DNA of 64,000 nt. Origin: Diadema antillarum. Lineage: Eukaryota. The notes below the pieces were generated by a model. The model was not told the DNA's origin. It saw nothing but the letters and a program-made list of their open reading frames with translations, and did not search any database. Below, one piece after another: positions 14,701 to 63,282 of this stretch. Numbering within the stretch: position 1 is the first letter of the stretch; each line of letters begins with the position of its first letter. The position numbers and the translations under genes were made by a program. The stretch is from the NCBI RefSeq assembly GCF_040938485.1, contig NW_027270904.1, positions 2,480,001-2,544,000 of the forward strand. The letters run 5' to 3'.

Positions 14701-17700
14701 CAGGAGAGGGTCCTTCTGCTGTCGGCCCTTCCATTGTCGGTCCGTCTCTTGTTGTTCCTTCTGCTGTTGGCCTTTCTGTTGTGGTACTCACTGTCGATGG
14801 CTTTTCAGGTGATGGTCCTTCAGTTGTCGGTCCTTTCGTTGTTGGTCTTTCAGGAGTGGATCCTTCTGCTGTTGGCCTTTCCATTGTCGGTCCTTCTCTA
14901 GTTGGACCTTCTGCTGTTGGCCTTTCTGTTGTTGGACCCACTGTCGTTGGCCTTTCAGGAGTGGGTCCTTCTGCTGTTGGCCTTTCTGTTGTTGTACCCA
15001 CTGTCGTTTGCCTTTCAGGAGTGGTTCCTTCTGTTATCGACCCTTCCATTGTCGGTCCTTCTCTTGTTGGTCCTTCTGCTGTTGGCCTTTCTGTTGTTGG
15101 ACCCACTGTCGTTTGCCTTTCAGGAGTGGTTCCTTCTGTTATCGGCCCTTCCATTGTCGGTCCTTCTCTTGTTGGTCCTGCTGTTGGCCTTTCTGTTGTT
15201 GTACCCACTGTCATTGGCCTTTCAGGAGTGGGTCCTTCTGCTGTCGGCCCTTCCATTGTCGGACCTTCTCCTGTCGGTCCTTTTGCTGTAGGCCTTTCTG
15301 TTGTTGTTCCCACTGTCGTTGGCCTTTCAGGAGTGGGTCCTTCAGTTGTCGGTCCTTCCGTTGTTGGCCTTTCAGGAGTTGCTCCTTCTGTTGTTGGCCC
15401 TTCCACTGTTGGTCCTTCTGCTGTCGGCCCTTCCACTGTTGGCCCTTCCGCTGTTGGTCCTTCTGCTGTTGGCCTTTCAGGTGACGGTCCTTCAGTTGTC
15501 GTTCCTTCTCTTGGTGGCCTTTCAGGAGTTGGTCCTTCTGCTGTTGGCCCTTCCACTGTTGGTTCTTCTCTCGTTGGTCCTTCTGCTGTTGGCATTTCTG
15601 TTGTTGTACCCACTGTCATTGGCCTTTCAGGAGTGGGTCCTTCTGCTGTCGGCCCTTCCATTGTCTGTCCTCTTGTTGGTCCTTCTGTTGTTGGCTTTTC
15701 TGTTGTTGACCCCCCTGTTTTTAAAATCAATCCAAGTTTTACACTTTGAGGAGCTGTTACTCATAACATGTCAATGACACTTTGTTGGCTTTGATTTTCT
15801 ACTCTTTTATACTTTGATATCTTCCTCATTATAACAAGTTATTGTAAATGGTAATTTCGTCGGTCTTATGAAGGTTTAGTGCTACCCAAATATTTTGGAA
15901 TGAAGTATAAAAGATAAATGCATTTCTAAATACATTAATTTTGTAGTAATTTCTGAAATATGTCAAATGATATAGATAGAAATTATAAGTATGGCATCAT
16001 TCTTGTTATCTCTGTATTTCTAAATATGCCAACACGCAGCAGCTTATACCAAATATATAGATATACATAGATACATAAATATGTATATTTATAATATACA
16101 TATGTAATATATATATACATACATATATATACATATATCTGAAGCAATAAATTGGCAAATCAAGATATTCCTGACCACATGATCTTACTTGCACTCATGG
16201 TCACTCCTGAGGATGAGTTAGACCTCGGTCCTGTTCCTCCTGGACCCTCCCTGACCGCTGCTACACTGACCTCGTATTCAGTGTCTGGATTCAGACCAGT
16301 CAATGTAGCAGATGTCGTTGAGGCTAATACCTTTGGTCCAGTAATCCATTTTTCATCAGGAAGCCTGTAATACGTGATGTATTCTGTGAGGGGTGGGTCT
16401 CCAACACTTGTCTGCTCACTCCAAGCCACCCACTCAATGGTAAGAGAGGTGGATGTTGATGCAGTAACTACTGGAGCAGCTTCAATTACAGGCAGAACTA
16501 TGAAAGAAATATCGCAAAATAAGAAAGGGAATTACACAAAACACCGATCTCGACCCATATCGGACCAGATTGGGTGCTAGTGCGTGATCGTGCCCTGGAC
16601 TGATATGGGCTGAGAACTACACATCCTGCCATGCTCATGTACATGCACATTGTATAAACTTAAGGCTATCTCGTCTATACATAAATGCAATTTGTCAAAA
16701 GTTGCTACAGCTCTATCATAATATACAGAAATCCCGAAAGTTCATCAAAAAAATTATCATTCTGATATTTCAGAACATTTCCTTACCGTACGTGACTGCA
16801 GAGACACTGAGGCTCGCCCGGTTTCCATATAGGGCACATTCATATTCTCCAGAAGTCACTCGATCAACTGAGAATACTACCATACGCCTATCTCCAGACG
16901 CATTCAGAGAACTCTGATTTTGACTTATGCCATAGTCATTTCGCACGCCATCAGTGAGTTGGTAGAAACTGACATCTGTTACGTCAGCTGGTGGATCTCC
17001 TTCAACAACACAGGTGAATGATGAAGGCTGGTTTGGATTAACTCTGACATTCACATAGAGGGCGTAGATCCCTGAAAGGAAATAAAAGTGTTACATTCAC
17101 ATGACAGCTACTCCTAGTCTCTTAAGCCCTTTTTACACTTGTGTTACTTAACCCCGGACTTTCTCTGACCCAGGACTATCGTCCCGTACCAATTTTTTCA
17201 GCTTTTTACACTCGCCAATTAGTCCAGTACTATCTCTAGTCCGGGGCTAAGGAGAAAACTGACCTTTTTACACTCGTATTTCTTAACCCCGGACTTTCCA
17301 AACCACATGAATATTCATGATTACGCTGTGTACTGTACACGCACACGCACGCACCGGCAGCACTTGATTACCTCCTTTCTGATTGGTCAGCGAGGGTCGG
17401 ACTTCGTCTCCGTCGCTTAGCCGAGGATTATTTTTTCGTTCTGTTTACACTCACTTGCTTGGCACCGCAATTGCGGTGCTAACCCTGCTATTTTGCAGGG
17501 CCAGATAGTACCGGACTATCGGTGGGGCTAGCCAACTTTGGCAAAAACGAGTGTAAACAGAAAGTGGGCTAAGGATAGTCCCGTACCAACGATGGGGCTA
17601 AGGCCCCCCCCCCCCCCCCCCCTTAGCCCCACCGTCGGTACGGGACTAAGCAAAAATTTACAAGTGTAAAAAGCCCTTTAGTACATCAATTCTAAACACA

Positions 17701-20700
17701 TTTTCTTCATATTCTTGTGCCAACTGTTTCATTTCGAAATTAATCTGAGAACATTTACACGTTTCCCTATGATATCATATGTGAGGAAATTTTACAGCGG
17801 CATTTTCGAACACATGCGATTCTGCAACATCAATAATAATAATAATAATGATAATGATAGTTGCAGATATCATGCGACTACTGCACTACTTCTACTTATA
17901 CTATTAATAATGAGAATAGTAACAACAATGGCTATGTGAGACACTAAAACAATGATTTGGTCCTATTACCCACGGAGGCCTATTTAGTGTCGTCATTGCT
18001 GCACTAGATGGCGCAACCATATCTGACTATGCTGATATTTCCAGGAACCTTGTTGAGATACCTGCTTCAAGACAGACGAAGAACATGCTCAAGAATGACT
18101 ACAATAGGATGGATTTGAAATATCCACAATGATGGTCTAATTAAAACTACTACGAGTGTTGCACTCCCTACATTACCTTCTTGACAATCTCTCTCCACCC
18201 AGTTTGGTAGACACTGTCCTCTACAGATTCCCGACACTTTGTCACAAGTGCTTTCATCACAGGGGCATGACTCCACACACCCAAGGCCATAGAACGCTCC
18301 TTGGCATTCTGTTAGATTATGCAGGGAAATAAAGACTGATCAACTAATGTCAATTACTTGCATAAAATTATCACAGCTAAAGAAAGAAGCGTTGTACCGT
18401 GAGTATATTTCCAAACAGTGATGGATTGACTACTCTTCCTATTTGAAAATAAGTCTCGCACATATCAAATGCATACCTGTGTCCAGTGTCACTTTATTCA
18501 CTCATTATATTTTAATATCTTTCTTACGGTTTTCGTATAAAGCCGTGACAATGAAGAGATCAGTTACATGGCCGTCATAAGTAATGTGCAAAGGGGAAAA
18601 ATAAGATCAAAACAAGACAACTGCTTAAAAAGTAGAATCTACTAAAATTCAGCTTATTTACTTCTTCCCCAGAGGATTTGCGTATTAAAATTAACGGTAG
18701 GAAGAAGCAAGGTATTAAATGTGTATGTATGAAACTGACAAAAGAAGATTTTCATCGCAAAATGGGCTTATTGCTATTTTTAGGCAAATCCATCGTCAAA
18801 TAGAGCGAAAAAAACTTTTGCAGTGATAAAATTCATAAAATTAGAGTAAGGGATATCCCGTATTTTCTTTCAATTCTCGTTGTTTTCTGCAGCTTTGATC
18901 GCAAAAATCTCAACTTAATGAAAATTGAGTTGGGTCGTTGTACGATGAAACTCTTGAAATGTATGTAAAAATGGATCACGTGACTAGAGAGAGTTACATG
19001 AACTAAGACAGTTCAGTATACTATTACCCTGACAGTGAACGTCATCATCATAGATGTTGAAATAGAGGGCGCACCGCTGATTCGGACACTCTCCTGTTAT
19101 CTTGTCACATGGTGCGTCATCCAAACAATGACATTTATCTGTACAGTCAGTTCCGTAGTAGCCGTCATCACACGTGTCCGGGACTGGAAAATGTATAAAC
19201 AAATAAGGCATAGAAATATCAATTTTATGTTTTGTGTTACTTGTGTTTCTTTCTTTTGAGGTAAAGAATCTGAGAAAACTCTTCTATTGAGCAAGTTACG
19301 TTTTCAAAAGATAGCTGAAAAACTCATGAAATGTGCGACCGTTCCTGTACTTAAAGGTCCTGATTACCCTTGTGAGCAGTGGAAAAATTCAAGATATCAC
19401 ATTTGATGCATATGTGTAGGTCCGTTGTATCAGAAAACATCCTACCATATAAAATATTTGCAATAAAGCATAAAATATAAGGAGATATCAGTTTTTTTTT
19501 CTCATTAAACCGTAAATGTAGATGGTTTGGTCTTGAAACATTTTTATTATAACTACATTTGTATTGTTCACAATATTTATCTAACAATAATCAATATCGA
19601 TTACAGGGATTCAAATTTCAACAGTGGTTGTTTCTAGCCATAACTTACATTTCAGATTCATTTCAAAGCATCAATGCTGGGTTTTTGTTTCTTCTGCATA
19701 TGGTAAATAATTATTATGCCTTAAAGCGTTGAAGAAAATAGTGACGTGATTCTTTATGATCTGATGATCTTTGGACATCATTTTTTTTTCATTTCTGCCC
19801 AAATTTCGATGTTTCCTGTAAAGCTGATTTCCCATGGTGAAAAATAGCAACGATATATACATATATTTGTACATATATGTATAGCCTCATCCAGAGGGCC
19901 TTTAATATCAATTTCTACTTCTTAATATCCATTTATGTGGTTTTGATTATATTTGATCTTTAAGGTTCAGTAAAAAATTCACTCTGCAGGACACCAAAAC
20001 TTTTAGTAGCGATCATTCATTAGTTCCTATAAAAAGTTTATTTTTTATTAAATATATATTTTTTATCAAATAAACATTAAAAACAACTATCAGAGTGGAA
20101 ATACGGCCAAACACATTACTTTCTACGTAGGTTGATATTGTTGCAACTTTCATGGAGCGATAGTTGATTTCTCTATTTATTCTTATGAGTTGTTTTTTTT
20201 AACGTATTTAGTTTACTTGTTTATTTCTGTCAACATGGATGTAATATAGCAAAGTTGAAAAAATACTTTACTATTATTTTTTATTTTTCATTTTTCATTT
20301 TATTCTATCTAAACTGTATATATATTGATGACACTGGAAATGAAGGAAGGGGAGGTTTCAATACTCACTTTGACAATTTTCCCCGGACCAGGTTGTCTGA
20401 CAGTCTGTTATAGGTGTTCCCGAAGAGGCTACACAGACTCCAGAATATCTGTTACATAGCCCAGACTGACAGTGACATGTTTGACTGCACCCAGCTCCAT
20501 ACGTTCCGCTGCTACAATCTTTGTAAAGTAAGAGGAAAAGAGGTGAACAACAACAACAACAAAGTCCTAAAAGTTCTCAGATAAAAAAATCATTATTATA
20601 TGGGATCTTCTGTATCTTTCGAGTTGATTGTAACCTTTTTATTTTGAAATATGTCACATGAGAAGTGGCTCGATATCAGTAATTGAATTGTGATATCAAA

Positions 20701-23700
20701 TTCAATTAATCCTTGTCTATTCATAGATTACTATGATGGTTCACTATTGTTGTATACTCTATTCAATTCACATTGTCTTGTTTACATTATTGTTTGTTAT
20801 AAAAGAAAGTGAAATGTATGTTGTCTGTCAAAAAATGAAAATAAATTTGAATCGAATTGAATTTGATAAATCAAAGTTTGCTGACTGCAGTCTTCAATAG
20901 ACTCCCATGACAATGTTTTTTTACCTGTATCACAGTTGATTCCTTGTCTTCCTGTGTCACAAGAACACCCAAAGGGATCAGGCAGGCAGAACTGAAAAGG
21001 ACTACAGGTGTCAGCTGGATCATTGTTATTGTATGTACATCTGAACTCACAGTTTGGTCCAAATCGATTTCCTCCATTGACTCTACAGACTAAAGAAGAA
21101 ACCAAAAGCACACCAATATACATGATATATTTCAAACACGTGTTTATAACTATTGATTGAATCAATGAAATACTGATTTAAAACAAAAATTTTCTGACTT
21201 GTGTATTCATAGACCATACATGCATTCCCTAAACTGAATCAAATATTTCCAGGAACATCCAATGCTGTTGGATCCAGTTTCCATATATTGCTTTTAGGGT
21301 ACCCGCCTACTATCTCTATCTCTACTAGCTCCAAAATTACTGACCTGCAGTAACATGCAGTAGAATCAATTGAGGAAACAAATTCTGACAACTGGCCGGT
21401 CAACGTTAGATCCCTTACCGTGAAAATAATTGTCATTACTTTGTCTAATTCTAACGAAATTATCATGGTTATTTTTCTTTATTTCATTCTTTCTGTCACA
21501 GCAAAAGTAAAACTAACCGTGAAATTTGCATCGCTTTAGAAAGATAGTTTGATTATTCATTAAGAAATGACCTGTATATCCCTTTGCGGCTACAATTTCT
21601 TCAAGATTACATACCTTCCGTGGAATATCAAGCATTTATTATGAAGAGCTTTATCACAAAACGAGCTAACTCCATTCCTGTTAAGTTGAGATATTTGTCA
21701 TTGAAGCTGCTAAAAAACACATAAAATGATAAGATAATAAAGAATATTTTTAATCATAATTTCTAGAATATTCCTTGTCATGTAACAAGTGAGGTATTAC
21801 TGGGAAGGTTTCATTTTGCTGATGATGGACTTACTTTGAAGTGTTTGAAAATGGCGCCTAGCTCATTTTGCAATAGAACTCTTCATATTTTCAATCAATC
21901 TTTATTAAGCGGAAAATTTCCTGATAAAATGAAAGTCGCTAGAGTTGTTCCTATATACAAAAAGGGTCCTAAAGAACATGTTAATAATTATCGCCCGATA
22001 TCTCTTTTAACTTCAATTTCAAAAATTTTGGAAAAGCTTGTTCATAAAAGAACTCTTAGATTTCTTATTAATTGTAATATTCTTTCGAATTTTCAGTTCG
22101 GTTTCAGAAAGCAACACAGCACAACCCACGCTTTATTGGCTTTTATTGATAAAGTGGCACGTGCTCTTGACGATGCTTCACACACCATCGGTGTTTTTAT
22201 TGATTTCTCGAAGGCTTTTGACACGATATTCTCCTTTATTACGGCATTCGCGGGACGGCTTTAGAATGGTTTAGAGATTATCTTACTGATAGAAAGCAGT
22301 ATGTTTATCTTAATGGTCATGAGTCCTCAATGAAATCAATTACATGTGGTGTCCCCCAGGGTTCCCTACTCGGCCCGCTACTATTCATCTTGTACATAAA
22401 TGACCTCCAAAATTCATCAGAGATTCTTTCTTTTATATGCTTTGCAGATGACACAAATTTATTTCTTTCATATCGTAATTCTAATACGCTTATTCATATG
22501 TTAAACAGCGAATTGAAACTTGTTCAATCCTGGATATATGCCAACAAGTTATCACTAAACATTGATAAAACATATTATATGCTGTTCAGTAACTCTTTGC
22601 AATTTATTCCTGGTCATGTCCAAATTAATGGCATTAATTTAACGAAGGTTGATAGTGTTAAGTTTCTAGGACTGTATATTGATAGCGATTTATCTTGGAA
22701 GTCTCACATCAACTTTTTAACCAAAGTTTTATCTAGGAATGCAGGAATTCTAAATAAACTGAAAGATTACTTCCCCACCAATATATTGCAAATTATATAC
22801 TCGACTATGATTTCCCCTTACCTCAACTACGGAATACTGGCATGGGGTAACACCAGTCTTTGCTTGACTCGCTCTTTCTCTTACAAAAGCGCGCTATTAA
22901 AATAATTAGTAAGACTGGGTATCTATCTCATACAGATGAATTTTTCCAGAAGAACACAATTTTGAAATTGTCAGATTTGTTTTATTACAATTTAGGGATA
23001 TTCATGTACAAATTATCCAAAAATGATCTTCCTGATATTTTTTTGCATATGTTTAAAAGAAATTACTCTATTCATAACTATCCCACCCGCCAACGTGACG
23101 ATTATCACCTACCACGTACCCGAACCATTTTTGCGAAAAAAACAATTATGTATACAGGGCCGAAGTACTGGAACGATCTCCCCATAGAACTCGCAGGTTG
23201 TTTGTCTTTGTCGACCTTCAAATACAAATTAAGACATAATTTATTGAATAATTACATTGCGTAAGTCCATTGAAATTTCCTTCTTTCTTGTTTATGTGCC
23301 TTTTCCTGCTGTGTTGGTTGTTGTTATTCAAATCAGTTAAGCCTCTCTGTTTGCGCTCTTAAAGGGGAAGGCTAGTAACTGATCAGTGGGAATCAGTGGA
23401 AATGCTGGGAGATGATTGTTCCAATCCTTATGGGATTCATTCAAGAGTTCATTGTATATCTATTGTTGTGTGAAAGTGATTTGCTTCAGAACGGTCTCAT
23501 ATTCAAGTAATGTGCAGATTAATGCTCCGTCACTGACCAGGGACGCTAACCTGGAAGCATTAAACGGCACATTACTTGAATATGAGACCATTCTGAAGCA
23601 AATCATTTTCACACAACAATAGATATACAATGAACTCTAGAATGAATCCCATAAGAATTGGAACAATCATCCCCCAGCATTTCCACTGATTCCCACTGAT

Positions 23701-26700
23701 CAGTTACTAGCCTTCCCCTTTAAATTCCTTCACACCAGTACCCCTTTTGGTACCCTAAGACCTCGGAACGCGTGAACAGCTGGCTTGTTGTATTCCCCTC
23801 AGTGCTATACTGGCTGGTAATTCTAATTAATTCCAAATTTTCTTTGAATGTTAGTACTTGTATGTTCACTCTTTAGGTTTCCCGTATCTCCTCCGAGGAC
23901 TCGCATGTCGAGTTGTTCTCTTTTCACCATTATTCAAATCATACTGCTACACTATTGTCAACATTGTTAAATCAACTGTTCTTACATCTGCAGAATGTGG
24001 TTGTCTGTATATCACTATTAATGTATTGAGAAGATTCTGTTAGTGCACCAGGTATTTTTGCCTTTCATTTTTGTTTCTCTTTATTTTGGTCCTACGTTGC
24101 ATCCGTGCTCCTCATCTTTACACTCTGTTCAGAATTTGGGACCTACGCTTAACAAGCTCGCTTTTAAGTAGGTTCCGTCATTTTTCTTTCGCGTTATACA
24201 TAGAACCAAACGTACGATGATTGACCACTATATGTTTTATATTCTTACATTAATTTACTGTACATCCAAGCCGGATCTACCGAACAAAAAATCCAGTGAC
24301 GGGGGTAAGCTACCTCTGAGTCTGTTAAAAGCCGTTTCTGAGTATGTCATTGCACCATTAGCCTTTATATTCAATTTGTCCTTTAAAACTGGTAAAATTC
24401 CGACTTCACTGAAATGTTCAAAAATCATCCCTATTCATAAAAAGGGGAAGAAGACAGATGTCAATAATTATCGACCAATCTCCATTCTGCCGACCACTGT
24501 GAAGATGCTTGAAAAGATTGTGTACAATCAGGTTTACTCCTATTTGCATTCAGTAGACGCCATTAACAAAAACCAGTCAGGTTTTCGCCCACAACATTCA
24601 ACAATGACCACGCTATTGAAGGTTACAGAAGACTGGCTCTCCTCTATGGATGATGATAGAATGACAGGAATGGTTAGTGTAGACTTAAGAAAAGCCTTTG
24701 ATACAGTGGACCACGCCATACTTGTAGACAAGCTGCGAATGATTGGCATGGCTCCCCATGCCTGTGAATGGTTTAAGGATTACCTCAGCAATCGCACACA
24801 ATATACTGAGGTGAATGGGTTTCAATCGAAATCACTTAGCGTAACATGTGGAGTCCCCCAAGGGTCCAATCTTGGCCCACTTTTGTTCACAATCTATATC
24901 AATGATTTGCCTAACTGCTTACAACGTTCATCGGTTGCATTATATGCTGACGATACGTGTATTTATGTGTCTGGTAAAAATGTAAAACAGATGGAAGAAA
25001 ATTTAAACCATGATATGGCCTGTATTGCAGATTGGCTTATATGTAACCGATTAGCCCTTAATTTGGAAAAATGTGAAACTATGTTAATAGGATCTAAAAA
25101 AAAAAAAAAGTTAAACATGTGAATTTGAATGTGATTGTAAATGACGTTAGAATAACTCAAGTTCCTTATTGTAAATATCTCGGTGTGTATATTGATCAGT
25201 CACTAGACTGGAGCCATCATATTGAACATTTGTGTAAACGCATTATCAGAGATTTGTATCTGTTAAAGAGAATAAGACATTTTATATCAGTTGAAACAGC
25301 TGTTACATTCTATAAATCCATCATTCAAAGTAACTTTGACTATTGTGATGTTATATGGTCAAATGTTAATCAGAGTTATATTCAGCGTCTTCAAATTCTT
25401 CAGAATCGTTCTCTAAGAGCAGTGTTGCAGGTGAATTCGAGATACCCAACTAATTTGTTATACTCACAAATTAATGTTGACACACTTGAGATGAGAAGGA
25501 AAAAACATATGTTGTGCACAATGTATAAAGTCGCTTATAATTTAACCCCTAAATACATAAGTGAAATGTTTGAGTTGAAAATTTTTGATTATGATTTAAG
25601 GAATACAACGCTGATATTCAAGTTACCATACATCAAAACCTGCTTTAGGCAAAGGAGTTTTAGTTATCAAGGTCCAAAATTATGGAATACATTGCCAACA
25701 TGCGTAAAACAGCAAACAATTTTTAGCGGTTATAGACGGAGTTTGAATTTGTATCTGACACCACAGTGATATTGTACCCATAACCCATCTTTTTTTTTTT
25801 CAAGTAAACCAAGCATGTATTCATTTTTTTTTTTAATGTAAACATTTTTTTCTTCTAATTTTGTTCTGATTTGTTTCGTCTAATTGTATTTTGTATATAT
25901 GTTTCATGTACATGTGTATATGTTTTGAAAAAAAAAAGTATGTCATTTTTACCTCATGATGCACGGACATGAGGAAGAACAGCCGTCTGGCTGAATCATG
26001 TGCCGTGTTGAAATAAATAAATGAAATGAAAATGAAATGAAATGATTCACTATGTTTTTATTATATTTGATGTACATTCCTTCATTGAGAAGTATGAAAA
26101 TAAATTGAAATTGAAATTGAAATTGAATATATTCATTCCATTCCATTTCAACTAGGTGTATACTATTTGTGAAGTGAGACACCTTCCTGATGATGTATAC
26201 TTACTCTCCAAACAGTTTGGTCCTCTGAAATTGTTTGGACATATACACCTGCCCGTCTCGTCATCACAAATTCCACCATTGTAGCAATTGTCACATATTC
26301 TGATGCAATAAGGTGGACCCCATTTACCAGCTGGACAATCTGCAAACAGAAAAAGAAATATGTATGTTGCATCTGATTGAGCTTTATGGTAGAAAACAAA
26401 ATAAGACAAAAATATACGGTATCCTTACTATCACAAAGGGTAATGAAGTTCATAATATCATGTACAACTCTTATCTAAGCAATGACCTTCACAACCTTCT
26501 GAGGGGCACAGGTCATTATTTGATATTTGAATGAATTTTCAAATGCAGTGATGTTAAATTCAACCCCAGCACAGCAGCGGACGTAGTCAAGAAAATTAAG
26601 ACATAAACTATGTGCACTCATAGTTTTCTGTTTTGTTGCTTGATATCAACTTTACATCATAACATATAGCTCCAGTGATTTACCTCGAACAATCAATTTG

Positions 26701-28875: not shown

Positions 28876-29550
28876 CTGGATATGGACAAATTACATACAT
28901 GAAGGAGGGTTTTAATCTCGGGGGGAAAAAAATCGAAAAACTACCGCTTAAATATTCACCCATGTTACACAGCATTTAGACAATACATCATAATATGTAC
29001 TGACCGCCTCAACATTTCTACATTGCTAAAATTGTCAAGTTAAATTCTGTCACTTCAAAACCTTCAAATCGTAAGAGCATGCCTACTGCTTCAGAGAAAT
29101 TAAGATTTATAATGATTATATGATTATTTCTTATTGAAAGCATTGAAACAGATGAAAAAAATGGTAACTCTAGGCAGAAACTTGTTCAGGTGATATGGCA
29201 TCACTCAGCCCCTAATAATAAGATATCATACAAATCATGTTTGGTCAATATCATTGAGGAACTAAAATCCTTTCAAGGTCATCATTACTCGATAATCACA
29301 GCATAACAAAAATACAAACTCTTTCTAAAAATTGTTTTATGTCAAACACAACATATCACTTTATCTAATTAACATAATCGTGTGCTTCATACTCATATCA
29401 TTGTTTTAATAGAAATACGCGAAATTTCTCAGTTTAATGATGTTCTTATTGTACGTCTGACTTATGTAATACTTGTGTATTTCTATTGGATTTGCTCTAT
29501 TTTTGAAAGGCTACCTATGGTGAGGCAGTGTACGACTCCCCGCAACATAA

Positions 29551-29710
29551 AGGGGATGGCTAGTAACTGATCAGTGGGAATCGGTGGAAATGCTGGGGGG
29601 GGGGGGGTGAATATTCCATTCTTGTGCATGGGATTCATTTGAGAGTACATTATACACTGTATATCTATTGTTGTGTGAAAATTATTTGCTTCAGAATGGT
29701 CTCATATTCA
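29551..29710. mobile_element. Single arm of MITE family 3 at the B/A junction
   Basis: Matches 23363-23515 and is joined directly to the truncated mucin exon. Confidence 0.8.
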
Positions 29711-30066
29711 TTATGTCGGTTCTTCTGCTGCTGGCCTTTCTGTTGTTTTACCCACTGTCGTTGGCCTTTCAGGAGTGGCTCCTTCAGTTGTCGGTTCTTC
29801 TGTTGTTGGCCTTTCAGGAGTTGGTCCTTCTGTTGTTGACCCTTCCACTGTTGGTCCTTCTGCTGTTGGCCTTTCCGGAGTTGGTCCTTCTGCTGTCGGC
29901 CCTTCCACTGTTGGTTCTTCTCTCGTTGGTCCTTCTGCTGTTGGCATTTCTGTTGTTGTACCCACTGTTGTTGGCCTTTCAGGAGTGGGTCCTTCTGCTG
30001 TCGGCCCTTCCATTGTCTGTCCTCTTGTTGGTCCTTCTGTTGTTGGCTTTTCTGTTGTTGACCCCC
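29711..30066 (-). CDS. Copy B short mucin exon, terminating ...PAAEEPT*
   Basis: Same acceptor as the giant exon; TAA at 29711-13 abuts a MITE arm. Confidence 0.7.
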
Positions 30067-52300: not shown

Positions 52301-53573
52301 GTGACCAGCATGTGAGTCTAATCACTAGAGTGGTTTCAAAAGGTAACACTTTTCTTTTATGTTCGCCCACTGATGCCCCAATATTTGTAATTTTGTCTAA
52401 ACTAATTCGTTTGCCCCAAATTTTCCTCTTTCTTTCTTAAATTCTTCGATCTGAATGATGTGTTTTAAGGGCGAAATGGACCAGTTCAACATGTTAAAGA
52501 TTGTTAAATGAAAGAGAGAGGTAACTTCCCATAAATACACAAAATGTACTTCACAATGTATTTGATGTATTTGATGGAACAAGTGATATATTAGCTATAT
52601 AGATAACGGGCTTGGCTACTTCATCTGAAATCATAGTTATAAGCTAATCTTGCAATATACGGATTTTGATGATTGCCGTCAGGGATTTATATTAGGAGTG
52701 TATCATACCGTATGATTAAATGGAGGACTAAGTGGATGATTTGAAGACTAGTTGCCAACCTACCTAAACCTATCCATTGGCGGATCCAGAAATTCCTTAA
52801 AGACGGGAGCATTCAAAAACTATAGGGGGCTCACGCACCACACCCCGGAAAGTTTTTATTTATTTTTTCTTGTTTTGTTTCAAGCAAAAAACAAAAACAA
52901 AAAACAAAAACAAAACAAAACAAACAAACAAAACAAAACAAAAACGCCGGAGCGCCTGCTGCTTCCCCGCCTTGATCCGCCACAGTTACGATACGATAAT
53001 ACATTTCCGTCTTTGCCCAGCAGCTGTTGATAGCATTTATTTTGTATGATGTTCTTTCTTTTTATTATTGGTCGGCATAGGAAAAGGGATACCTGCAAAA
53101 CAGTTTCTAAGCTTAAATCTAATTGGCCGTTGTTATCATATAGTTGTCGTTATTCTCAACAAAGACTCCTCATCATGGAGTTAGAAGTACCTGATGTAAG
53201 CTATTCTTACAAGTTTGATTGTGTATATTGTCATGTGAGTACAAGGCATTGTTTTGTTTTATACCGTCACTTCGTTTGAAGAATGATGATATCGTCTGGT
53301 CGTCAAAGCCTTCTTGTGAACCAAGGCAGTAAAATGCTCCGAATCCCTCCACATCCCATTCTGCAGTGGATGGAAAATGTACACGTCTGATATCTCGAGT
53401 ATAGTCGCGAGCTGCAGGTGGCTCAGGTGAGGTGTCACTGGGGATTGGTGCTGTCCTGCCAAAGTCACGGGAGGCTGATGAGGATGGAGAGCTTCGAAAG
53501 CAGAGCATCTGAGAAGTTGCACTCTCAATGTTTGAAAATCCAACTGAAAGCACAGTGATGTGGACCCGCTCAC
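39454..53573 (-). CDS. Copy C: TIE-like Ig-Ig-EGFx5-Ig-FN3 cassette + short mucin exon ending in TAA
   Basis: Exons 53265-53573, 51253-51519, 47689-47823, 47215-47376 (162 nt), 46659-46811 (153 nt), 42682-42837, 41832-41963, 40996-41280, 40404-40712, 39454-39914. All are in frame and the only indels are whole codons. Confidence 0.8.
43088..45110 (+). mobile_element. 3' fragment of an RNase-H-bearing non-LTR retrotransposon (I/Nimb-like)
   Basis: WGAD....LLYRSLVRPHLDY; RNase H motifs IYTDGS...EL.AI...FSDSLS...WVPAH.G..GNE.AD; C-terminal CxxC..ETVEH.L..C knuckle; boundaries approximate. Confidence 0.85.
45840..45982. repeat. Minisatellite, about 6 copies of ATGAGCTCCCTCGTGGAGAC
   Basis: Visible tandem units of 22-28 bp. 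Confidence 0.85.
48136..51206. mobile_element. Foldback-type TIR element, 3,071 bp, non-coding
   Basis: TGTATCACCCCTAAATG...CATTTAGGGGTGATACA ends; flanks AATAT/GATAT versus the empty site GATAT in A and B; arms about 1.3 kb, loop about 430 bp. Confidence 0.9.
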
Positions 53574-54569: not shown

Positions 54570-57500
54570 TAGGTTTTCCCGGCCAATTTCGCACTTTTTT
54601 CACTCCAATTCCTAATTGCTGCATTCAATTTAGCACAATCTAGCCTAGATGGCATGTTCGGTATTTCAATTTTAGAATCTTTTCATTCAAATTCATTTTG
54701 GAGCATTCAAATTACCTTTAACATCATTCGAATCAGCACTTTTTCAGGTCAAATTCGTAAGACAAGCACCATTTTGCAAATCGTTCATTCAATTTAGCAG
54801 GATATAGTCACGTGATCGCGTATAAGCTGTGCTCGTTCATTCGAATTCATTCTTGGGCATCCACTTTCGCATTTACTGCAGTCAATTTAGCAGACACGCT
54901 TATGCTTTTATTCCTTTTTTTTTCGTTTTCATTCATCATAGGTATTGTTTGCAAGCATCATAACATTTCATATTTTCGTATTCATTCTTTATTCTGAGAT
55001 CACCCTCGCAACAGTACTTTCAAAATATGTGTATGTGTTTATAATGTTCGATAGCATTATTTTATTCACAGATGCATTAATCTTAAGTTAGTTTTGACAT
55101 TAGTGGGGAGAAGGAGGTTTCAATTTACATCGTGATTATTTCTATCATCTGCATATTTCATTATTTTCATTTGGTGGGTGCTATATTGCGTCGATCATCA
55201 TAAAGTTCTTGGATCAGCTCTAGCCATCAATTTGTCAAGGTTATTACCCTCAAATTCAATTCAATTCAATTCAATTCACTTTATTGATAATCATAAAAAT
55301 GGAAATATATACAGAGTAAAATGTGTCGGGGAGTTCACAAAGAAAGCCAAAGGCTTGAGACAAGTGATCCCCATTACGAGAGTTGGATACATAAGAATAT
55401 ACATGCAAATGCAGATTCAGAGTTACATTCAGATTACTTAATGACAGTTACAGATAACATATAGACAAATAAGATGAAATAAAAGACATATGCTACTACA
55501 TTACACAAATAAAACAAACAGACAGAACAAGACTAACAAAGATGGACTGATACAATTCAATAGGCATTTAAAAGATATTGTTTATATCTAGACTTAAAAG
55601 CACTTTGAGTGGATACATTCTTAAAAATTGAATCCAAATCATTCCAAAACTTAGCAACTTTACATAAAATAGAATTTTTTTGCTTTATGCTCAAGCGACA
55701 AAATGGCAACACAATGTTATCCTTATTTCGAATTTCAATGTTATGTAATGCACAATTCAGTGTAAAAGAACCATAAAAAATGTCAGGTAAAATTGCATTC
55801 GAGTATTTATACATAAAAAGACCAAGTTTGACTAAGACACTGTCAGACAGAGTGAGAGTATTCCATTTTTTGAAAAGTGGAGCGGTGTGGTCAAGAGAGT
55901 TGGCGTTTGAACAAATTCGAATTGCTTTTTTCTGTAAAACAAATAAACGACACAAATTAGTTAAGCTGGTTCCAGACCATACGAGACTACAATAATCAAA
56001 ATGAGGCAAGATAAAGGCATTATACAACATAAAAAGAGTATGTTTCGGCAGTATTGAACAAGGCTTATGCATTATACCAATAGAGATACTTATCTTCCCA
56101 TGAATATTATTTATATGTTTAGTCCAAGTCAATTTATCATCAATAATAACTCCTAAATAATTAATACTTTCAACTTGATCAATAATTCGATTATCTATCT
56201 TAATTTCTGAATACGAAACCAATGAAACATCTTGCCGAAAACTTCTGATAGAGTGGAATATCATATATTTTGTCTTATCAACATTTATCTGTAGCTTATT
56301 AGCTCGGAGCCAGTCACAAACGTACATCATTTCAGTGTTGACAGTACTATACAGAGTATTTACATCTCTATGTGAAAACAATATATTTGTGTCATCTGCA
56401 TACAGAATGACTTGTAAAAACTTTGATGTATTTATTATATCATTAACGTATATCAAAAAAAGAAGAGGGCCCAAAATACTGCCTTGAGGGACCCCACACG
56501 TTAAAGGTAAAGTACTAGAGTTTGTGCCATTAATACATGTGAACTGCTTACGATCTGTCAGATAATCCCTGAACCAACTGAGGGGTACACCTCTAACACC
56601 ATAGTGTTCCAGTTTGTGCAGCAAAATGCTATGGTCGAGCGAATCAAAAGCTTTACTTAAATCAACGTACAGGGCAATCACGGTTTCTTTGTTGTCGAGT
56701 GAAGAAAGGATTTGTTCGAGGGTATGTAAAAGAGCTAATTCAGTTGAGTATAAAGGTCGAAATCCAAACTGTTCTTTGGCCAGTATTTTGTTCTGGAGCA
56801 AATGATCATACAATCTATTATAGATAATGCGTTCGAGGATTTTCGAAAATGCAGGTAAAAGAGAAATAGGACGGTAATTTTCTATTGCTTGTTTGTCGCC
56901 TTTCTTATAAATTGGAATTACTTTGGCGATCTTAAATGCATCTGGTACAACACCTGTGGTTAACGATAAATTGAATATAATAGAAAGAGGCTTGGCAATT
57001 GCAAAAACAGTTTTCTTAATAAATACAACACTTATATCATCATGTCCAGCAGACAAAGTATTTTTTAAACGTTGTACGACCTTGATGATTTCATTTTCAT
57101 CAGTAGGAAAAAAGAAAACTGATTTATTTACTTGATTGCCCAGATAATCTGAAAAATGGTTTGAGGATTTGTTGACATTTTTTGAAATACAAGAACCTAT
57201 TGATGCAAAATAAGAATTAAATATATTGGCAATCATTTTATCATCTTCTATTAATCTGTGACCCTTCAGAATACGTTGAGGCAATCTAGAAGCATTGCTT
57301 TGTCTGCCCAGAATTTCATTAATAACTTTCCAAGTTTTACAAATATCGTTTTTGTTTCGTTCCAGTAAACGTGTGTAATACTCTTGCTTCCGTAATCGAA
57401 TAAGTCTATTAAGTCTATTTCTAAATTGTTTGTACAAAAATTCATTTCTTTTGGAAGGGGAGGTGATATGTTTCCGATATAATCTCTGCTTTTTTGCAAT

Positions 57501-59912
57501 TGATGACATAATCCCTTTTGTCATCCATGGTTTTCTGGGAGTGTATTTCTTTCCCCTAAATGCCTCATTGTATTCTACCGTATGTTTTTCACGCATGGAC
57601 TCAAATTCATTCACAAAAGCTTCATATGCAATATTGGGGTCTTTACAGTTTTCGACACATGACCAGTTGTTAGAATACAATTCACGTAAGAGATCATCAG
57701 ACACAATTTTTTTCAAGGTCCGTTTACAATGTCTTTTCGGGCAGTGGGTATCTTGAGCACAATGTGACTTTGTAAGATGAAAGATCGGTAGATGGTCTGT
57801 TATATCTGAGAAAAGTACCCCAGGTATAATAGGTTTATCCATGACATTTGTAAATATATTATCAATGCAGGTGTAGGAAGATTGAGTTAAACGAGTTGGC
57901 TTAGTAATCAAAGGCCTAAAACAATTTTCATACATTATGCTCAAGAAATCACCAGTGGCGGAATGTGTAGAATATTTCAATATATCATAATTAAAATCAC
58001 CAACAATGTAACAAAATTTATTTTCTTTAGCTATGTTAGAGATACAATTTTCGAGCAAGTCGTTAAATGCACTAGAATCAGTGTCCGGGGCCTTGTAAAC
58101 AACTCCCACGATAATGTTTTTATCGCGTTTCTGTTTCACCTCTATGAATATGGTATCAACGAAATCATTTGAGAAAGACAAATCAGTTCTCTCATCATTA
58201 TGTCAATGCGCTGTCAACATATATGCAGACGCCACCACCTCTCCGGTTTTGTCGCGGTTTGTGAATTAAAGAATATCCAGGTATACTATACAAAGACGGA
58301 ACAAATGGTTTGAACCAGGTTTCAGTAAACGCGTAGATCGAAAACTTGTGATCTAACGTTGAAATGTAATCAGAAATACTTGAAAAATTAGCGGATAAAC
58401 TTCTGGAATTTAAATGCAATATGGAAAAATATTCATCAGTATTCACATTACAGAAATTCTTATTGAAATCGTCACTGAAATAATGATTACATGGGGTCTC
58501 CATATCATCACCTGAAACATGATAATCATTCATTTGCACTGCATCAAACACATAGGAGTTTAGATTTGGGGAAATAGAGTTTCTGTCGCGATGGAAACAT
58601 GAATACAAAGTGCTCTGAAATTCTTGATCGTCGATGTAATGATTGAAAGGAAGCTCACTCCATATACAAAAATCACATTTCCAATGGATAGAGTGCAAGT
58701 CCAGGTTAATGCCAGAACATTTTACATGACACTGCCTACCACATGAACATACTAGTTTGATTTGATTCCATCGTACACAGGAGAGACAGACACAACACTT
58801 CATTACAACATATACAACAATAAATGCTTACATAACACCGTGACCACAAGCGCGCCAGCGGAATTTGAGGCAGGCAGAATTGAAAAGAATAACAGAGAGA
58901 AAAGTTCAAGAGGAGTTCAAAAGTTCACTTGCCTGAATTCTCAACAGCCTCCTATGTTTACATCGAATAAATTAAAGTTAAATTAGGCCGGAGTAAGGAA
59001 ACATAGAAATGGTAATACGGGTCGCGTGAGTTACTTCAAAAACCGTTCGCAGTGTTCTTTCCAGTCGGAATGTGATGCTATCGTGAACAGTCTGTTGGTT
59101 GTTTTGACTTTGATTTTTCCGTCTTGGGTCCATACCTTGTGATCATGTTGGTTGTATTTCAGCTTCACCTTTCTCAGGAGACTCTGTCGTTCACTTATCA
59201 GATTCTCGTGAATGTAGATGCCAGTCGACCTCAGTTTGGATCTCGAGGCGTAGACTGACGACCTCGGTCCGTAGCCGCAGAACTTGACGATGATCGGGCG
59301 ATGAAGTGGCCGTCCTTTTCTGTCATTCCTTCCTCGCTCACCTATCCTATGCGATCGGTCGATGTCCTCCTGTCCAAATGCTTCTATGATTCTTTCCCTG
59401 TCTTCTTGAGAGATACGCCTGTATCTAACTCGTGCTGCCATGACTGGACATAAGAAAGTGAAGTGAATCTATGGTACTGGTGCATGTATAGTTCTGATAT
59501 CATGTATGAAAGAAGAGGGGTGTTACAGAACAACAAACTTGAGTTATTTAGAGTCAAAGATACCTTTACTTTATACTTAACAGTGTGTGGATGAAATAAA
59601 AATTCACATTTAAATACGTATAAATCACGGTTCTCACCTTTTCAAAATAGAAATAACATCACGCCAATTTGAATGAACATGTTTGGAATTGGACTGCCCA
59701 TACGCGAAATTGAATGACTGAAATACCATTTTCCGCCAGTGCTGGCGAATTTGAATGACTGAAGAGCACGTGCCAATTTGAATGCCCGTTTTTCGAATTC
59801 GAAAAGCACACGTGCGAATTTCATTGATCGAAATGCTAAATTGATTTTCGCTAAATTGAATGAACCTTATCAAATAGACTGACAAAAGTGCGAAATTGGC
59901 CGAGAAAACCTA
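54570..59912 (-). mobile_element. TA-flanked TIR DNA element (IS630/Tc1/mariner-like deletion derivative) hosting a LINE
   Basis: TIR TAGGTTTTCCCGGCCAATTTCGCACTTTT / AAAAGTGCGAAATTGGCCGAGAAAACCTA; TA duplicated relative to the empty site tttaatagaaat in A and B; subterminal AATTTGAATGA repeats. Confidence 0.75.
55256..59374 (-). mobile_element. CR1/L2-like LINE: ORF1 C-terminal part + ORF2 (PHD-APE-RT), one frameshift near 58190
   Basis: ORF1 RSHRIG...RPIIVKF...WTQDG; ORF2 Cys-rich PHD-like N-terminus, APE (HLNSRSL, FTETW, GGGV, GDFN, IDNIF) and RT (VPQGSILGP, YADDT); (TTGAA)n tail; ATTTG TSD. Confidence 0.92.
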
Positions 59913-61749
59913 TAGAAATACCCGAAATTTCTCAATTTAATAATGTTCTTATTGTACGTCTGACTTTAAAATGTAATACTTGTGTTAGTAGTTCGATGGG
60001 ATTTGCTCTATTTTTGAAAGGCTATCTATGGTGAGGCAGTGTACGTCTCCCCGCCACTTAAAAAGTCTGGATATAAGCCGCTATCCCTTTGCCCTTTGAA
60101 TGAAACGCACAATTTTCAGAGGGTTTCACGAGGTCTTTTTGCAGCTAGGCTGTCGTAATCCTGACGAGGAATAGTGGAAAACGAAAAACAGTCAGTGCGA
60201 GACCGTGTTCACCCAGGGAGGGTTCCCACCTCCCTGGTTCATCTGTTTCCCGTTGCATGTTGCGGCGGCGAGTTATAGTCTCATTACTCTGTCGTGATGC
60301 CTTGACAAATCATTTTTTGATTTTTTTTTTTATAGCGTTTGTCGGCTACCCTCCTTCCCCCACCCCCACCTATAAATTCTGGCAATGGTGTTTCATTGTT
60401 TGACACATTGTTTGACTGTCTATGCACGACAATCAAATAATGTTGAATAGGAAATAATACCACTCATAACTTCATCCCACCGTGCAACATTATTGACTCT
60501 TTTTCCACACGCAAGTCTGGTGTCATGTTAGAAGATCCTTCTATATCACTAATCCTATAGTGATAAGGCATGGCGGTCTCTTACACAAAAGTTTCAATAC
60601 AAATTCCCTGCTGTGTGAAAAACGGCTCGTCACCATGTTTATTTGCCTTATGCTCGGGTTATAGGGCTCACACCTGTAAATAAAATGGAATGTCCCAGAC
60701 CCCTTCACAAATTCGTACCAAAGATACCAAAATGAATTAAGGAAAAAGATTTATAAAAAATCAATAATGCAGTTTGGCAAAAACTGAATAGTTGCAGATA
60801 TTGATTATGAATTCCTCTACAAACTACATTTTGGTTGGAAGATGAAAGCTTTTCTCATGGATTTTGTAGGGACTATATTTCATTGGGTGCATGTACAGAA
60901 AGTAGGTGACTTTTTGAGTGAAAAGAACTCGTAGTCTGGCTTTGCGGACCCTTGGACAGAGTTTGAGCTGAAGAACCTGCCTTGGGAATTTGATGGATGA
61001 AAGGGTATATCTCACTTATTCAGGTTAGTAAAGATGAAACACCTCATTTCTCCCAGCTATTTTAGAGAATTTTTTGAATGTTGAATTTTAACACACGTCT
61101 CTATGGGGAATTATTTACCCGTGTGTGCCCTAATAGCGAGCTTTATTGCGACGCGAAGGCTAAGACGACGTAGCTTCCCGGGTTGGACAGCGGCAACAGC
61201 TGTCCCGTGCATATGCGGGAACCATTTTTGCCTAATCAGTGTCGGGTTAGCGTTCGCGTCGTAGAGCTTAAACAGTATTGATGGAGATGAGAAATGGGCT
61301 TTTAACTTTTTGCGAGATACCAAGAAAACACTTATGATATAGTACAGAGCATACCATTTTAAGAGGAATTCAAAGTTTATCTGATGAAAATCGGGTTTGG
61401 AATGACTGAAACATCCAAAAACAAAGTAAAACAAAGCGATCGTAATAAAGTGTGGGTCCCACACTTTATCGCTCTTTTTTGGATATCTCAGCCATTTCAA
61501 AACCAATTTTCATCAAATAAACATTGAATTCCTCATAGAATTACATGCTCTTTCATATTTCATAATAGGTTTCTCATTATCTCACAAAAAAAAAATGTTA
61601 GAAACCTGAAATTAGGCCTCAACCAAAACTATTTTAAGCTCGCTGTATATTAATGATAATGCCCGTGGGTTATAATGCGCTTTGGAGGAGCAGTGGCAAC
61701 AACGATCACAGGGTAGAGAAGTCCACATTAAATTTTGACATGCTCCTCC

Positions 61750-62250
61750 AAGACATTTTATCTATTTTATCTATGCTTTATAATTCGTTGATATTATCGA
61801 ACATCTCATATTGTAACATTGTTTGGGCAACTGCAAAAAGTCACACTGACAGTATATTGCTTCTACAAAAGAAAGCTATACGTATATGCACCAATTCAGG
61901 TTATCGGGACCATTCAGATCCTTTGTTCGTAGAATTAAAAACACCAAAGGTAAATGATATCAATTTTTTGCAAAATTCACTTCTTATGTTTCGTTTGTGT
62001 AACGGTCAGTTGCCATCTTCTTTTTTCTCATTATTTCATTTAAACAAGGATATACATTCTTATCCCACAAGGCAATCTGATAAATTTCATCTACAAAATC
62101 CTAAAACGGTGAAGGCTCTGAAATCTATCAGACACACTGGACCTGATATTTGGAACTCTCTTCCTTCAGAAATTCGAACTTTAAAGTCTATGTATTCTTT
62201 CAAGAAAGCTGTAAAGACAATGCTGCTCTCTGGATATCAGTGATCTTATA
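61750..62250 (+). mobile_element. CR1/L2-like LINE ORF2 C-terminal fragment
   Basis: LYNSLI...YCNIVW...LQKKAIRIC...WNSLP pattern. Confidence 0.85.

Positions 62251-63239: not shown

Positions 63240-63282
<43 letters not shown>

What the first reader, a model, noticed from the sequence alone, without database searches (positions are those of the whole stretch)
16189..60061. Triplicated TIE-like ectodomain cassette feeding one mucin-NIDO-AMOP-VWD tail: candidate diversified-receptor system
Three intact 9-exon cassettes lie head-to-tail upstream of a single constant region. The FN3 donor (phase 1) is compatible with the next Ig1 acceptor (phase 1) and with the giant mucin exon. Possible outputs: (i) a leader spliced to C, B or A as alternative variable regions; (ii) a concatenated (Ig2-EGF5-Ig-FN3)x3 protein that skips the short mucin exons; (iii) secreted C-only or B-only forms. 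No frameshifts or broken splice sites were found in 27 cassette exons despite heavy TE insertion in the introns, which suggests purifying selection.
Basis: partly seen in the sequence, partly recalled or inferred. Interest (0 to 1): 0.82.

Follow-up and report, generated by a model that had tools for sequence, protein, structure and literature searches.

The report
Triplicated Tie-like block in urchin mucin gene
A long-spined sea urchin (Diadema) gene resembling the membrane mucin MUC4 has gained a nine-exon, Tie-receptor-like binding module from a tyrosine-phosphatase receptor family and tripled it in tandem; all three copies are intact and differ sharply in one small surface patch, but no transcript data could be reached to show how they are used.

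Summary
On the minus strand, three head-to-tail copies of a nine-exon block (Ig-Ig-EGFx5-Ig-FN3, 635 aa each) lie upstream of one 4,356-nt mucin exon and a NIDO/AMOP/VWD tail. All 27 exons are open, have AG/GT sites and are phase 1-1. Introns are also 90-96% identical, so this is a young segmental triplication. The two junctions are near-identical (truncated mucin exon + 165-nt transposon fragment).

The genome is Diadema. The block's closest relatives are Diadema receptor tyrosine phosphatases (75% identity). That ectodomain is homologous to human Tie2 (E 1e-35; top fold matches).

Selection is supported: introns carry 6-8 frameshifting indels per kb, the exons none.

New here: a 63-nt patch in Ig1 is only 63-70% identical among copies. 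Its exon flanks are 97-100% identical. The same patch is the least conserved stretch in the reliably aligned N-terminal half (Ig1 to EGF4) of the paralogues.

The repeated unit has no leader exon. In a paralogue the same Ig1 acceptor takes a leader from 20 kb upstream. Every splice option stays in frame.

I favour one concatenated protein (0.5). "Diversified-receptor system" overstates three germline copies on a mucin.

The parts
40404..53573 (-). Cassette C: nine exons (Ig1, Ig2, EGF1-5, Ig3, FN3). Introns hold an RNase H retroelement (about 43000-46603) and a 3-kb inverted satellite element (48135-51207).
39457..39914 (-). Short mucin exon C. It has the same acceptor as the giant exon. The ORF of 152 codons ends with TAA exactly at the duplication junction. 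A phase-1 GG|GTAAAA donor lies at 39495 (420-nt exon).
39286..39453 (-). C/B junction filler: a transposon-like fragment, also found at 23360-23505 and inverted at 23577-23722.
30550..38631 (-). Cassette B: nine exons. It is a mosaic: its Ig1-Ig2 part is closer to C, its EGF2-EGF3 part is closer to A.
29714..30066 (-). Short mucin exon B. The ORF of 117 codons ends with TAA at the junction. A phase-1 GG|GTAAAA donor lies at 29752 (315-nt exon).
29548..29710 (-). B/A junction filler: the same transposon-like fragment as at the C/B junction, with small differences.
16189..28875 (-). Cassette A: nine exons. Copy-specific insertions are RT-bearing retroelement pieces (21888-26127) and a 555-nt short element (17124-17677).
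28655..28717 (-). Hypervariable patch of Ig1, copy A (21 codons). The paralogous patches are 38411-38473 (B) and 53353-53415 (C).
38411..38473 (-). Hypervariable patch of Ig1, copy B.
53353..53415 (-). Hypervariable patch of Ig1, copy C. It is 86% identical to the patch of the D. antillarum phosphatase gene P0155.
11359..15714 (-). Giant mucin exon: 4,356 nt, phase 1-1, about 290 copies of a 15-nt (GPTxE-type) repeat.
4939..5619 (-). Open segment holding the C-terminal part of NIDO and the start of AMOP.
1997..2326 (-). Start of the VWD domain, with a GDPH motif at 2215-2204. The gene runs off the window at base 1.
54570..59911 (-). Non-LTR retrotransposon in the intron upstream of Ig1-C. It has an 881-aa open frame with an RT domain and is specific to copy C.

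Best explanation
This is a lineage-specific chimeric mucin gene of a Diadema sea urchin. The 5' ectodomain exons of a Tie-like receptor tyrosine phosphatase (Ig1-Ig2-EGFx5-Ig3-FN3) sit between an unseen leader exon and the giant tandem-repeat exon of a MUC4-type gene (mucin, NIDO, AMOP, VWD with GDPH).

How it arose. A segment running from about 0.7 kb upstream of Ig1 into the mucin exon was duplicated, with a transposon fragment as filler. Unequal crossing-over between the copies then made three.

How I think it is read. The unit holds no leader or promoter of its own and every exon is phase 1-1, so the default product is one transcript. In it the leader joins Ig1-C, and FN3-C and FN3-B join the next Ig1, either directly or through the short mucin exons. 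That gives three Tie-like modules in series at the tip of a long O-glycosylated stalk (3,359-3,604 aa before the tail). By analogy with MUC4, the protein would probably be cleaved at GDPH.

The three modules are kept alike by exchange between copies, except for a 21-codon patch of Ig1 that is kept or made different. This suggests three binding specificities.

Status of each step:
- Shown: the structure, the intact frames, the homology, the patch.
- Inferred: the splicing pattern, the expression, the function.
For: - Structure and junctions.
- All splice combinations are open.
- Frames are conserved against an intron background of 5.8-7.6 frameshifting indels per kb (expected about 11 per pair in 1.9 kb, observed 0). 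All 46 cysteines are kept in each copy.
- The CCAG|GTGA acceptor of Ig1 is conserved. In the annotated paralogue P0154 it receives a leader exon from 20 kb upstream.
- No leader-like exon was found inside the unit or in 60062-64000.
- Precedent for in-frame reading of tandem exon blocks in this family: P0154 carries four (Ig-FN3) exon pairs in one annotated ORF.
- Cassettes A, B and C form a 100/100 clade inside a Diadema-only clade of phosphatase ectodomains.
- Tie2 homology.
- Patch: flanks 97-100% identical against 63-70% in the patch, equal length in all copies, and synonymous divergence also raised (0.23-0.27 against 0.03-0.05 in the rest of the exon).
Against:
- No protein in the searched collections contains these cassettes (best 80% identity) or this mucin exon, although two Diadema genomes have NCBI annotations there. 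Either this assembly is not annotated in those collections or no model was called here.
- The leader exon and the 3' end lie outside the window.
- The mucin-exon acceptor has a weak pyrimidine tract.
- Exchange between copies could keep B and C open without each being selected.
- NIDO and AMOP are only partial or faint Pfam hits.
Confidence: 0.5

Rival explanations
1. Variable-constant usage. The leader, or promoters not yet seen, joins Ig1 of C, B or A alternatively. Each mRNA then carries one cassette joined to the giant mucin exon (2,087 aa before the tail), giving three isoforms that differ mainly in the Ig1 patch.
For: The single-cassette products C-to-mucin, B-to-mucin and A-to-mucin are all open. 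The patch differs between copies. All exons are symmetric phase 1-1.
Against: No mechanism is visible that would skip 9-18 well-formed exons as a block. The unit has no leader or promoter. The FN3-C and FN3-B donors lie about 0.5 kb from a short-mucin acceptor identical to the real one. There is no transcript data.
Confidence: 0.15
2. Only the proximal cassette A is part of the working mRNA. B and C are young passengers that are skipped, or that trigger decay through the truncated mucin exons, and they have simply not had time to break.
For: The duplication is young (intron divergence 4-10%). dN/dS is only 0.37-0.53, and exon divergence is close to intron divergence. No annotated protein holds the cassettes.
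Against: Over the same time the introns gathered 6-8 frameshifting indels per kb, while 3 x 1.9 kb of exon gathered none and the three indels seen are in frame. All cysteines and all 54 splice sites are kept. Exchange between copies could mimic part of this.
Confidence: 0.15
3. Truncated secreted forms. Transcripts from the leader run through cassette C (or C and B), enter the short mucin exon, stop at the TAA at the junction and are polyadenylated. This would give soluble Tie-like proteins beside the full mucin.
For: The short exons keep the acceptor and the open frame up to a stop exactly at the junction. An ATTAAA lies about 0.3 kb downstream (read).
Against: The ATTAAA lies in sequence that is also present upstream of C, so it is not junction-specific. 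Without nearby polyadenylation such mRNAs would be decay targets. B has no leader of its own.
Confidence: 0.08
4. Assembly artefact: haplotypes or mis-joined reads strung in tandem, with the true locus holding one or two cassettes.
For: Diadema genomes are highly heterozygous (2.52%), and one published assembly retained both haplotypes (PMC13511894). The junctions lie in a tandem repeat.
Against: - Both junctions have a specific structure (mucin repeat, then a 165-nt transposon fragment, then the Ig1 upstream region), and they differ from each other by a few bases.
- The copies carry different retroelement insertions and differ by 4-10%, with a mosaic pattern typical of unequal crossing-over.
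- There are no Ns in the window.
- Retained haplotypes in that paper are separate contigs, not tandem copies.
Confidence: 0.07

Closest known systems
MUC4 (and the Mesh / SUSD2 group of NIDO-AMOP-VWD proteins)
   Same: One giant exon of PTS-rich tandem repeats is followed in order by NIDO, AMOP and VWD, and a GDPH motif sits at the start of VWD.
   Different: - Tie-like Ig/EGF/FN3 modules lie N-terminal to the mucin domain. In the searches that could see them (no length limit; 813-2,588 aa) no protein carrying this cassette family also had NIDO, AMOP or VWD.
- The repeat unit is 5 aa.
- The EGF, transmembrane and cytoplasmic parts were not seen, because they lie beyond the window.
Tie1/Tie2 receptor ectodomain and the echinoderm Tie-like receptor tyrosine phosphatases (e.g. 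XP_072179579.1, P0154)
   Same: The domain order is Ig-Ig-EGF-Ig-FN3. Identity to Diadema phosphatase ectodomains is 75%, with the same nine-exon structure. The paralogue hits Tie2 2gy5/4k0v at E 1e-35 and as the top Foldseek match.
   Different: There are five EGF-type exons and one FN3 per module. No kinase or phosphatase domain follows; the modules continue into a mucin.
Intragenic multi-exon copy arrays (LPA kringle IV-2; the FCGBP-like array noted elsewhere in this genome)
   Same: A tandem duplication of a block of symmetric-phase exons adds whole modules in frame. The copies are kept alike by exchange between them.
   Different: There are only three copies, each 10-20 kb long with nine exons. 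The junction cuts an exon, leaving truncated mucin exons between the copies. One patch escapes homogenisation.
Variable-constant gene layouts (clustered protocadherins, Dscam exon arrays)
   Same: Repeated upstream units precede a single downstream constant part, and the differences between units are concentrated in a presumed binding surface.
   Different: The units have no promoter or leader of their own, and no signals for mutually exclusive choice are visible. Each unit is a nine-exon block, and there are three units rather than dozens.

Membership tests
MUC4-type membrane mucin | Large central exon encoding Pro/Thr/Ser-rich tandem repeats | tested here: met
   The exon 15714-11359 is 4,356 nt with a 15-nt period and about 287 copies. 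Composition is T 27%, P 19%.
MUC4-type membrane mucin | NIDO domain after the mucin region | tested here: inconclusive
   Pfam NIDO E 7.4e-5, 23.3 bits against a cut-off of 25, covering only profile positions 98-155 in one exon. The Atlas features also point to NIDO. Spliced upstream exons could not be submitted.
MUC4-type membrane mucin | AMOP domain between NIDO and VWD | tested here: inconclusive
   Pfam AMOP E 0.026, 15 bits, profile positions 2-39, at the expected place. The rest rests on my reading of Cys motifs in 4305-3988.
MUC4-type membrane mucin | VWD domain with a GDPH self-cleavage motif | tested here: met
   Pfam VWD 25 bits, above the 22.9-bit cut-off. PDB sequence hits to FCGBP (4.5e-15), MUC5AC and VWF. 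The motif WGDPHISTLDG is at 2215-2204. Only the first exon of the domain was examined.
MUC4-type membrane mucin | C-terminal EGF-like domains, transmembrane helix and short cytoplasmic tail | not testable with these tools
   The gene runs off the window at base 1.
TIE receptor tyrosine kinases | Ectodomain homologous to the Tie2 Ig1-Ig2-EGF-Ig3 ligand-binding region | tested here: met
   Tested on the closest paralogue, P0154:31-659, which is 75% identical to the cassette. phmmer against 2gy5/4k0v gives E 1e-35. The AF2 model has pLDDT 90, and its top Foldseek hits are 4k0v, 2gy5 and 9lv4. The window's Ig2 exon alone did not reach Tie2.
TIE receptor tyrosine kinases | Three FN3 domains, a transmembrane helix and a cytoplasmic tyrosine kinase | tested here: not met
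   There is one FN3 per cassette, and the next exon is a mucin repeat. No kinase or phosphatase domain is in the window. This is not a TIE receptor; it has only a TIE-like ectodomain.
Alternatively used variable-exon clusters (protocadherin or Dscam type) | Each variable unit has its own promoter and leader, or there are signals enforcing a choice of one unit | tested here: not met
   No leader-like exon lies within the units. The Ig1 exon starts at a conserved internal acceptor. An apparent ATG-led extension upstream of Ig1 is not homologous to paralogue leaders at the DNA level, and its frame differs in copy C.
Alternatively used variable-exon clusters (protocadherin or Dscam type) | mRNAs that carry one unit each | not testable with these tools
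No matching transcript-derived proteins were found.

The most novel reading that the evidence does not exclude
The 21-codon Ig1 patch is a specificity-determining hypervariable region shared by a whole echinoid family of Tie-like ectodomains. It would be kept diverse by selection, or shuffled by short-tract gene conversion between family members. Two hints point that way: copy C's patch matches that of phosphatase gene P0155, and part of copy B's matches P0156. On this reading the triplicated mucin chimera is a multivalent, mucus-tethered recognition or decoy molecule presenting three specificities, that is, a germline-diversified surface-recognition system in sea urchins.
Probability: 0.15. 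Interest if true: 0.7.

Novelty: new variant of a known kind. Interest (0 to 1): 0.47.

Why it matters
If transcribed as inferred, this is a clear and datable case of new protein architecture arising by exon shuffling: a receptor-phosphatase ectodomain placed onto a MUC4-type mucin. It was followed by in-frame amplification of a nine-exon block, and the junction still shows how it happened.

The sharply bounded hypervariable patch lies inside otherwise homogenised copies, and the same patch varies across the paralogous phosphatase receptors. It marks a candidate ligand-contact site for an echinoderm receptor family whose ligands are unknown. It also gives a concrete target for population and binding studies in Diadema, a genus hit by mass mortalities.

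If B and C turn out to be unused, the locus is an ordinary young segmental duplication.

Tried and rejected
- **Read evidence.** Two local BLAST runs inside the closed sandbox used the whole window file against fetched loci and gave no hit there.
- **Protein searches for the locus's own gene model or transcript fragments:**
  - The Ig1 open segment found nothing.
  - The Ig2 exon against all representatives gave a best hit of 80%, which is a paralogue.
  - The cassette of P0001 against 813-2,588-aa proteins found no hit with NIDO, AMOP or VWD.
  - The mucin exon gave only compositional matches.
- **'Relic signal peptide' upstream of each Ig1**. Rejected: the DNA alignment with five paralogue loci loses similarity about 35 nt upstream of the acceptor, and the frame differs in copy C.
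- **Leader exon in 60062-64000, or between the units.** None was found.
- **P0002 (D. antillarum) as the orthologue.** Rejected: it is only 66% identical at the protein level (exon DNA 74-88%), has a premature stop in its FN3 exon and has no mucin within 10 kb downstream.
- **Donors for the A and B patches.** None of the five paralogue loci exceeds 73% identity; only C matches P0155, at 86%.
- **Other checks.** Earlier scan notes gave nothing at this place. The window's Ig2 exon alone does not reach Tie2 in the PDB.
Full report
**1. What is in the sequence**

The window has no Ns. A strong T-over-A skew at 11-16 kb and a 15-nt tandem repeat at 11.4-15.7 kb mark a mucin exon. It reads on the minus strand as GPTxE-type repeats.

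Self-BLAST of 16-64 kb shows three head-to-tail units:
- A: down from about 29551.
- B: 39289-29714.
- C: 60062-39457.

They are similar in introns as well as exons:
- FN3 to EGF4 region: 95-96% for all pairs.
- EGF2-EGF3 region: about 96% for A-B, but 89.5% for either against C.
- Ig1-Ig2 region: 94.5% for B-C, but 91.5-92% for either against A.

Copy B is therefore a mosaic. That is what unequal crossing-over between two older copies produces.

**2. The exons**

I placed nine exons in copy A from open segments, splice sites and phase, then mapped them to B and C. All 27 exons have a length divisible by 3, AG and GT sites, no stops and phase 1-1. Each cassette codes 635 aa with 46 cysteines. 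Pfam sees FN3, Ig and EGF in the single exons. The annotated D. antillarum paralogue P0154 has the same nine exons with the same borders.

**3. The junctions**

Each upstream unit ends inside a copy of the mucin exon. It has the same acceptor, then 117 codons (B) or 152 codons (C) of open repeat, then TAA exactly where the homology breaks.

After that comes a 165-nt fragment also present as inverted copies at 23.4-23.7 kb, so it is transposon-like. Then the sequence found about 0.7 kb upstream of Ig1 resumes. Upstream of copy C this homology stops at 60062.

The two junctions are the same apart from a few bases. This fits one original duplication, with a transposon fragment as filler, followed by a recombination that copied the junction.

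Both short mucin exons hold a phase-1 GG|GTAAAA site 39 nt before the stop. The giant exon has the same variant once, at 12528, which suggests where the original break lay.

Copy-specific insertions show the copies have separate histories:
- RT-bearing pieces in A.
- An RNase H element, a 3-kb inverted satellite element and a 5.3-kb non-LTR retrotransposon in C.
- A 555-nt short element in A.

**4. The constant part**

- The giant exon 15714-11359 is 4,356 nt and phase 1-1.
- NIDO is a partial hit below the Pfam cut-off.
- AMOP is faint but at the right place.
- The VWD start is above the cut-off, with WGDPHISTLDG and PDB matches to FCGBP, MUC5AC and VWF.

The order and the giant repeat exon are those of MUC4 (my knowledge; MUC4 papers listed). 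The gene leaves the window at base 1.

**5. Whose gene and whose module**

My searches agree:
- The Ig2 exon's best matches are Diadema setosum and D. antillarum proteins at 80% and 74%.
- The whole cassette is 75% identical to P0154 and 69% to P0001. Both are receptor-type tyrosine phosphatases with this ectodomain followed by more FN3 and two phosphatase domains.
- In other echinoderms the same ectodomain sits on Tie-like kinases, on 'angiopoietin-1 receptor-like' proteins and on HYR/hyalin-like proteins.
- No protein found with the cassette carried NIDO, AMOP or VWD. The searches had no length limit and covered 813-2,588 aa.

A maximum-likelihood tree puts A, B and C in a 100/100 clade with very short branches. 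That clade lies inside a 100/100 Diadema-only clade of phosphatase ectodomains.

The 'TIE-like' label is sound. P0154:31-659 matches human Tie2 at E 1e-35. Its AlphaFold model (pLDDT 90) has Tie2 structures as its three best Foldseek hits. It is a Tie-like ectodomain, not a TIE receptor.

**6. Selection**

Overall dN/dS is 0.37-0.53, with dS 0.05-0.09. Exon substitution divergence (2.9-4.4%) is close to that of introns (3.8-5.5%). 'Purifying selection' is therefore not obvious from substitutions.

The indels are decisive. Aligned non-exon sequence has 7-9 indel events per kb, about 83% of them not a multiple of 3. That predicts about 11 frameshifts per pair in 1.9 kb of exon. The exons have none, and their three indels are 3, 3 and 6 nt. 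Even if the intron rate is inflated two- to three-fold by simple repeats, zero is unlikely (P below about 0.01; my estimate).

One caveat: exchange between copies can mend a broken copy.

**7. A hypervariable patch (new)**

In Ig1, exon columns 159-221 are 63-70% identical among A, B and C. The rest of the exon is 97-100% identical, and about 400 nt of intron on each side shows mostly 0-3 differences per 40 nt, apart from a few short indel patches.

- The patch has the same length in all three copies.
- Non-synonymous differences: 15-19 of about 48 sites.
- Synonymous differences: about 4 of 15 sites, against 2-3 of 58 in the rest of the exon.

Because silent sites are raised too, the patch has a different history (older, or imported), not just faster amino-acid change.

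Among A, B and C it is the only 20-aa stretch below 80% identity. It is also the least conserved stretch in the reliably aligned N-terminal half (Ig1 to EGF4) of five Diadema phosphatase paralogues (their alignment is unreliable from EGF5 on).

- Copy C's patch is 86% identical to that of P0155, like its flanks.
- Part of copy B's patch (RRIQFLP) recalls P0156.
- No donor was found for copy A.

In the model the patch is an ordered hairpin plus a short helix before the F strand. Two readings remain open: homogenisation of the copies with selection keeping the patch distinct, or short conversion tracts from other family members.

**8. How it is probably read**

The Ig1 exon begins at a CCAG|GTGA acceptor conserved in five paralogue loci. 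In P0154 a 30-codon leader exon lies 20 kb upstream of it.

The units have no such exon, and neither does 60062-64000. An ATG-led extension upstream of Ig1 looked like a relic signal peptide, but it is not supported at the DNA level.

So B and A can only be expressed through transcription from upstream of C. Every combination is stop-free:
- C-B-A-mucin: 3,359 aa.
- The same with both short mucin exons: 3,604 aa.
- Any single cassette plus mucin: 2,087 aa.

The family already reads tandem exon blocks in series: P0154 has four Ig-FN3 pairs, the later three 58-85% identical to the first, in one annotated ORF.

I therefore favour a concatenated protein, at 0.5. The rivals are alternative single-cassette use (0.15), only A used (0.15), truncated secreted forms (0.08) and an assembly artefact (0.07).

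**9. Limits**

I worked beside that stretch afterwards.
- No database protein holds these cassettes or this mucin exon, although both annotated Diadema genomes are in the collections. This is weak evidence against an expressed, annotated gene, or a sign that this assembly is not the annotated one.
- Diadema heterozygosity is 2.52%, and one published assembly retained both haplotypes as separate contigs (PMC13511894). The junction structure and the copy-specific insertions argue that the tandem array is real, but long reads should confirm it.

**10. Verdict**

This is a real, young, in-frame triplication of a Tie-like, phosphatase-derived ectodomain block inside a MUC4-type gene, with evidence for frame conservation and a sharply bounded hypervariable patch. 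It is a new variant of known kinds (chimeric mucin; intragenic block amplification). It has not been shown to be a diversified receptor system.

Noticed in passing
window 48144-49129 and 50308-51202: Two arrays of about 21 copies of a 40-nt unit (ACCCTAAATGTAATA...) lie in opposite orientation around about 1.2 kb. Together they form a 3-kb foldback-like insertion, found only in the Ig2-EGF1 intron of copy C.
   Followed up: partly
window 55560-58827 (minus strand): A non-LTR retrotransposon with an 881-aa open frame (RT domain, E 1e-38) and an adjoining 209-aa open frame. It is nearly intact, so possibly recently active.
   Followed up: partly
window 17124-17677; L004 242-800; L005 1-996 and 51362-51943: A 555-nt element specific to copy A has 91-95% identical copies in two D. 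antillarum phosphatase gene loci. This is a young short interspersed or MITE-like family.
   Followed up: no
L001 55902-68001 (D. antillarum gene of P0154): Four tandem (Ig, FN3) exon pairs are read in one annotated ORF; the later three are 58-85% identical to the first. Intragenic block duplication recurs in this receptor family.
   Followed up: partly
L004 53408-53656 (D. antillarum gene of P0002): This paralogue has all nine cassette exons, but its FN3 exon carries an in-frame stop (...LDPDTDY*). No mucin or phosphatase exons lie within 10 kb downstream. It is a truncated, possibly secreted or decaying, family member.
   Followed up: partly
window 2204-2215 (minus strand): A GDPH motif lies at the start of the VWD domain. 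This is the self-cleavage site type of MUC4, MUC2, MUC5AC and FCGBP.
   Followed up: no
window 28300-29217 and paralogous stretches: About 0.9 kb around Ig1 is largely 98-100% identical among the three copies, apart from a few short indel patches, while sequence further out is about 8% diverged. This looks like a recent homogenised tract that nevertheless encloses the 35-40% diverged patch. It remains unexplained.
   Followed up: partly
window 46659-47376 (EGF2 and EGF3 of copy C): Copy C has in-frame indels (-3 nt in EGF2; indels netting +3 nt in EGF3) and about 12% divergence from A and B. These are secondary variable spots, and they coincide with variable stretches in the paralogues.
   Followed up: partly
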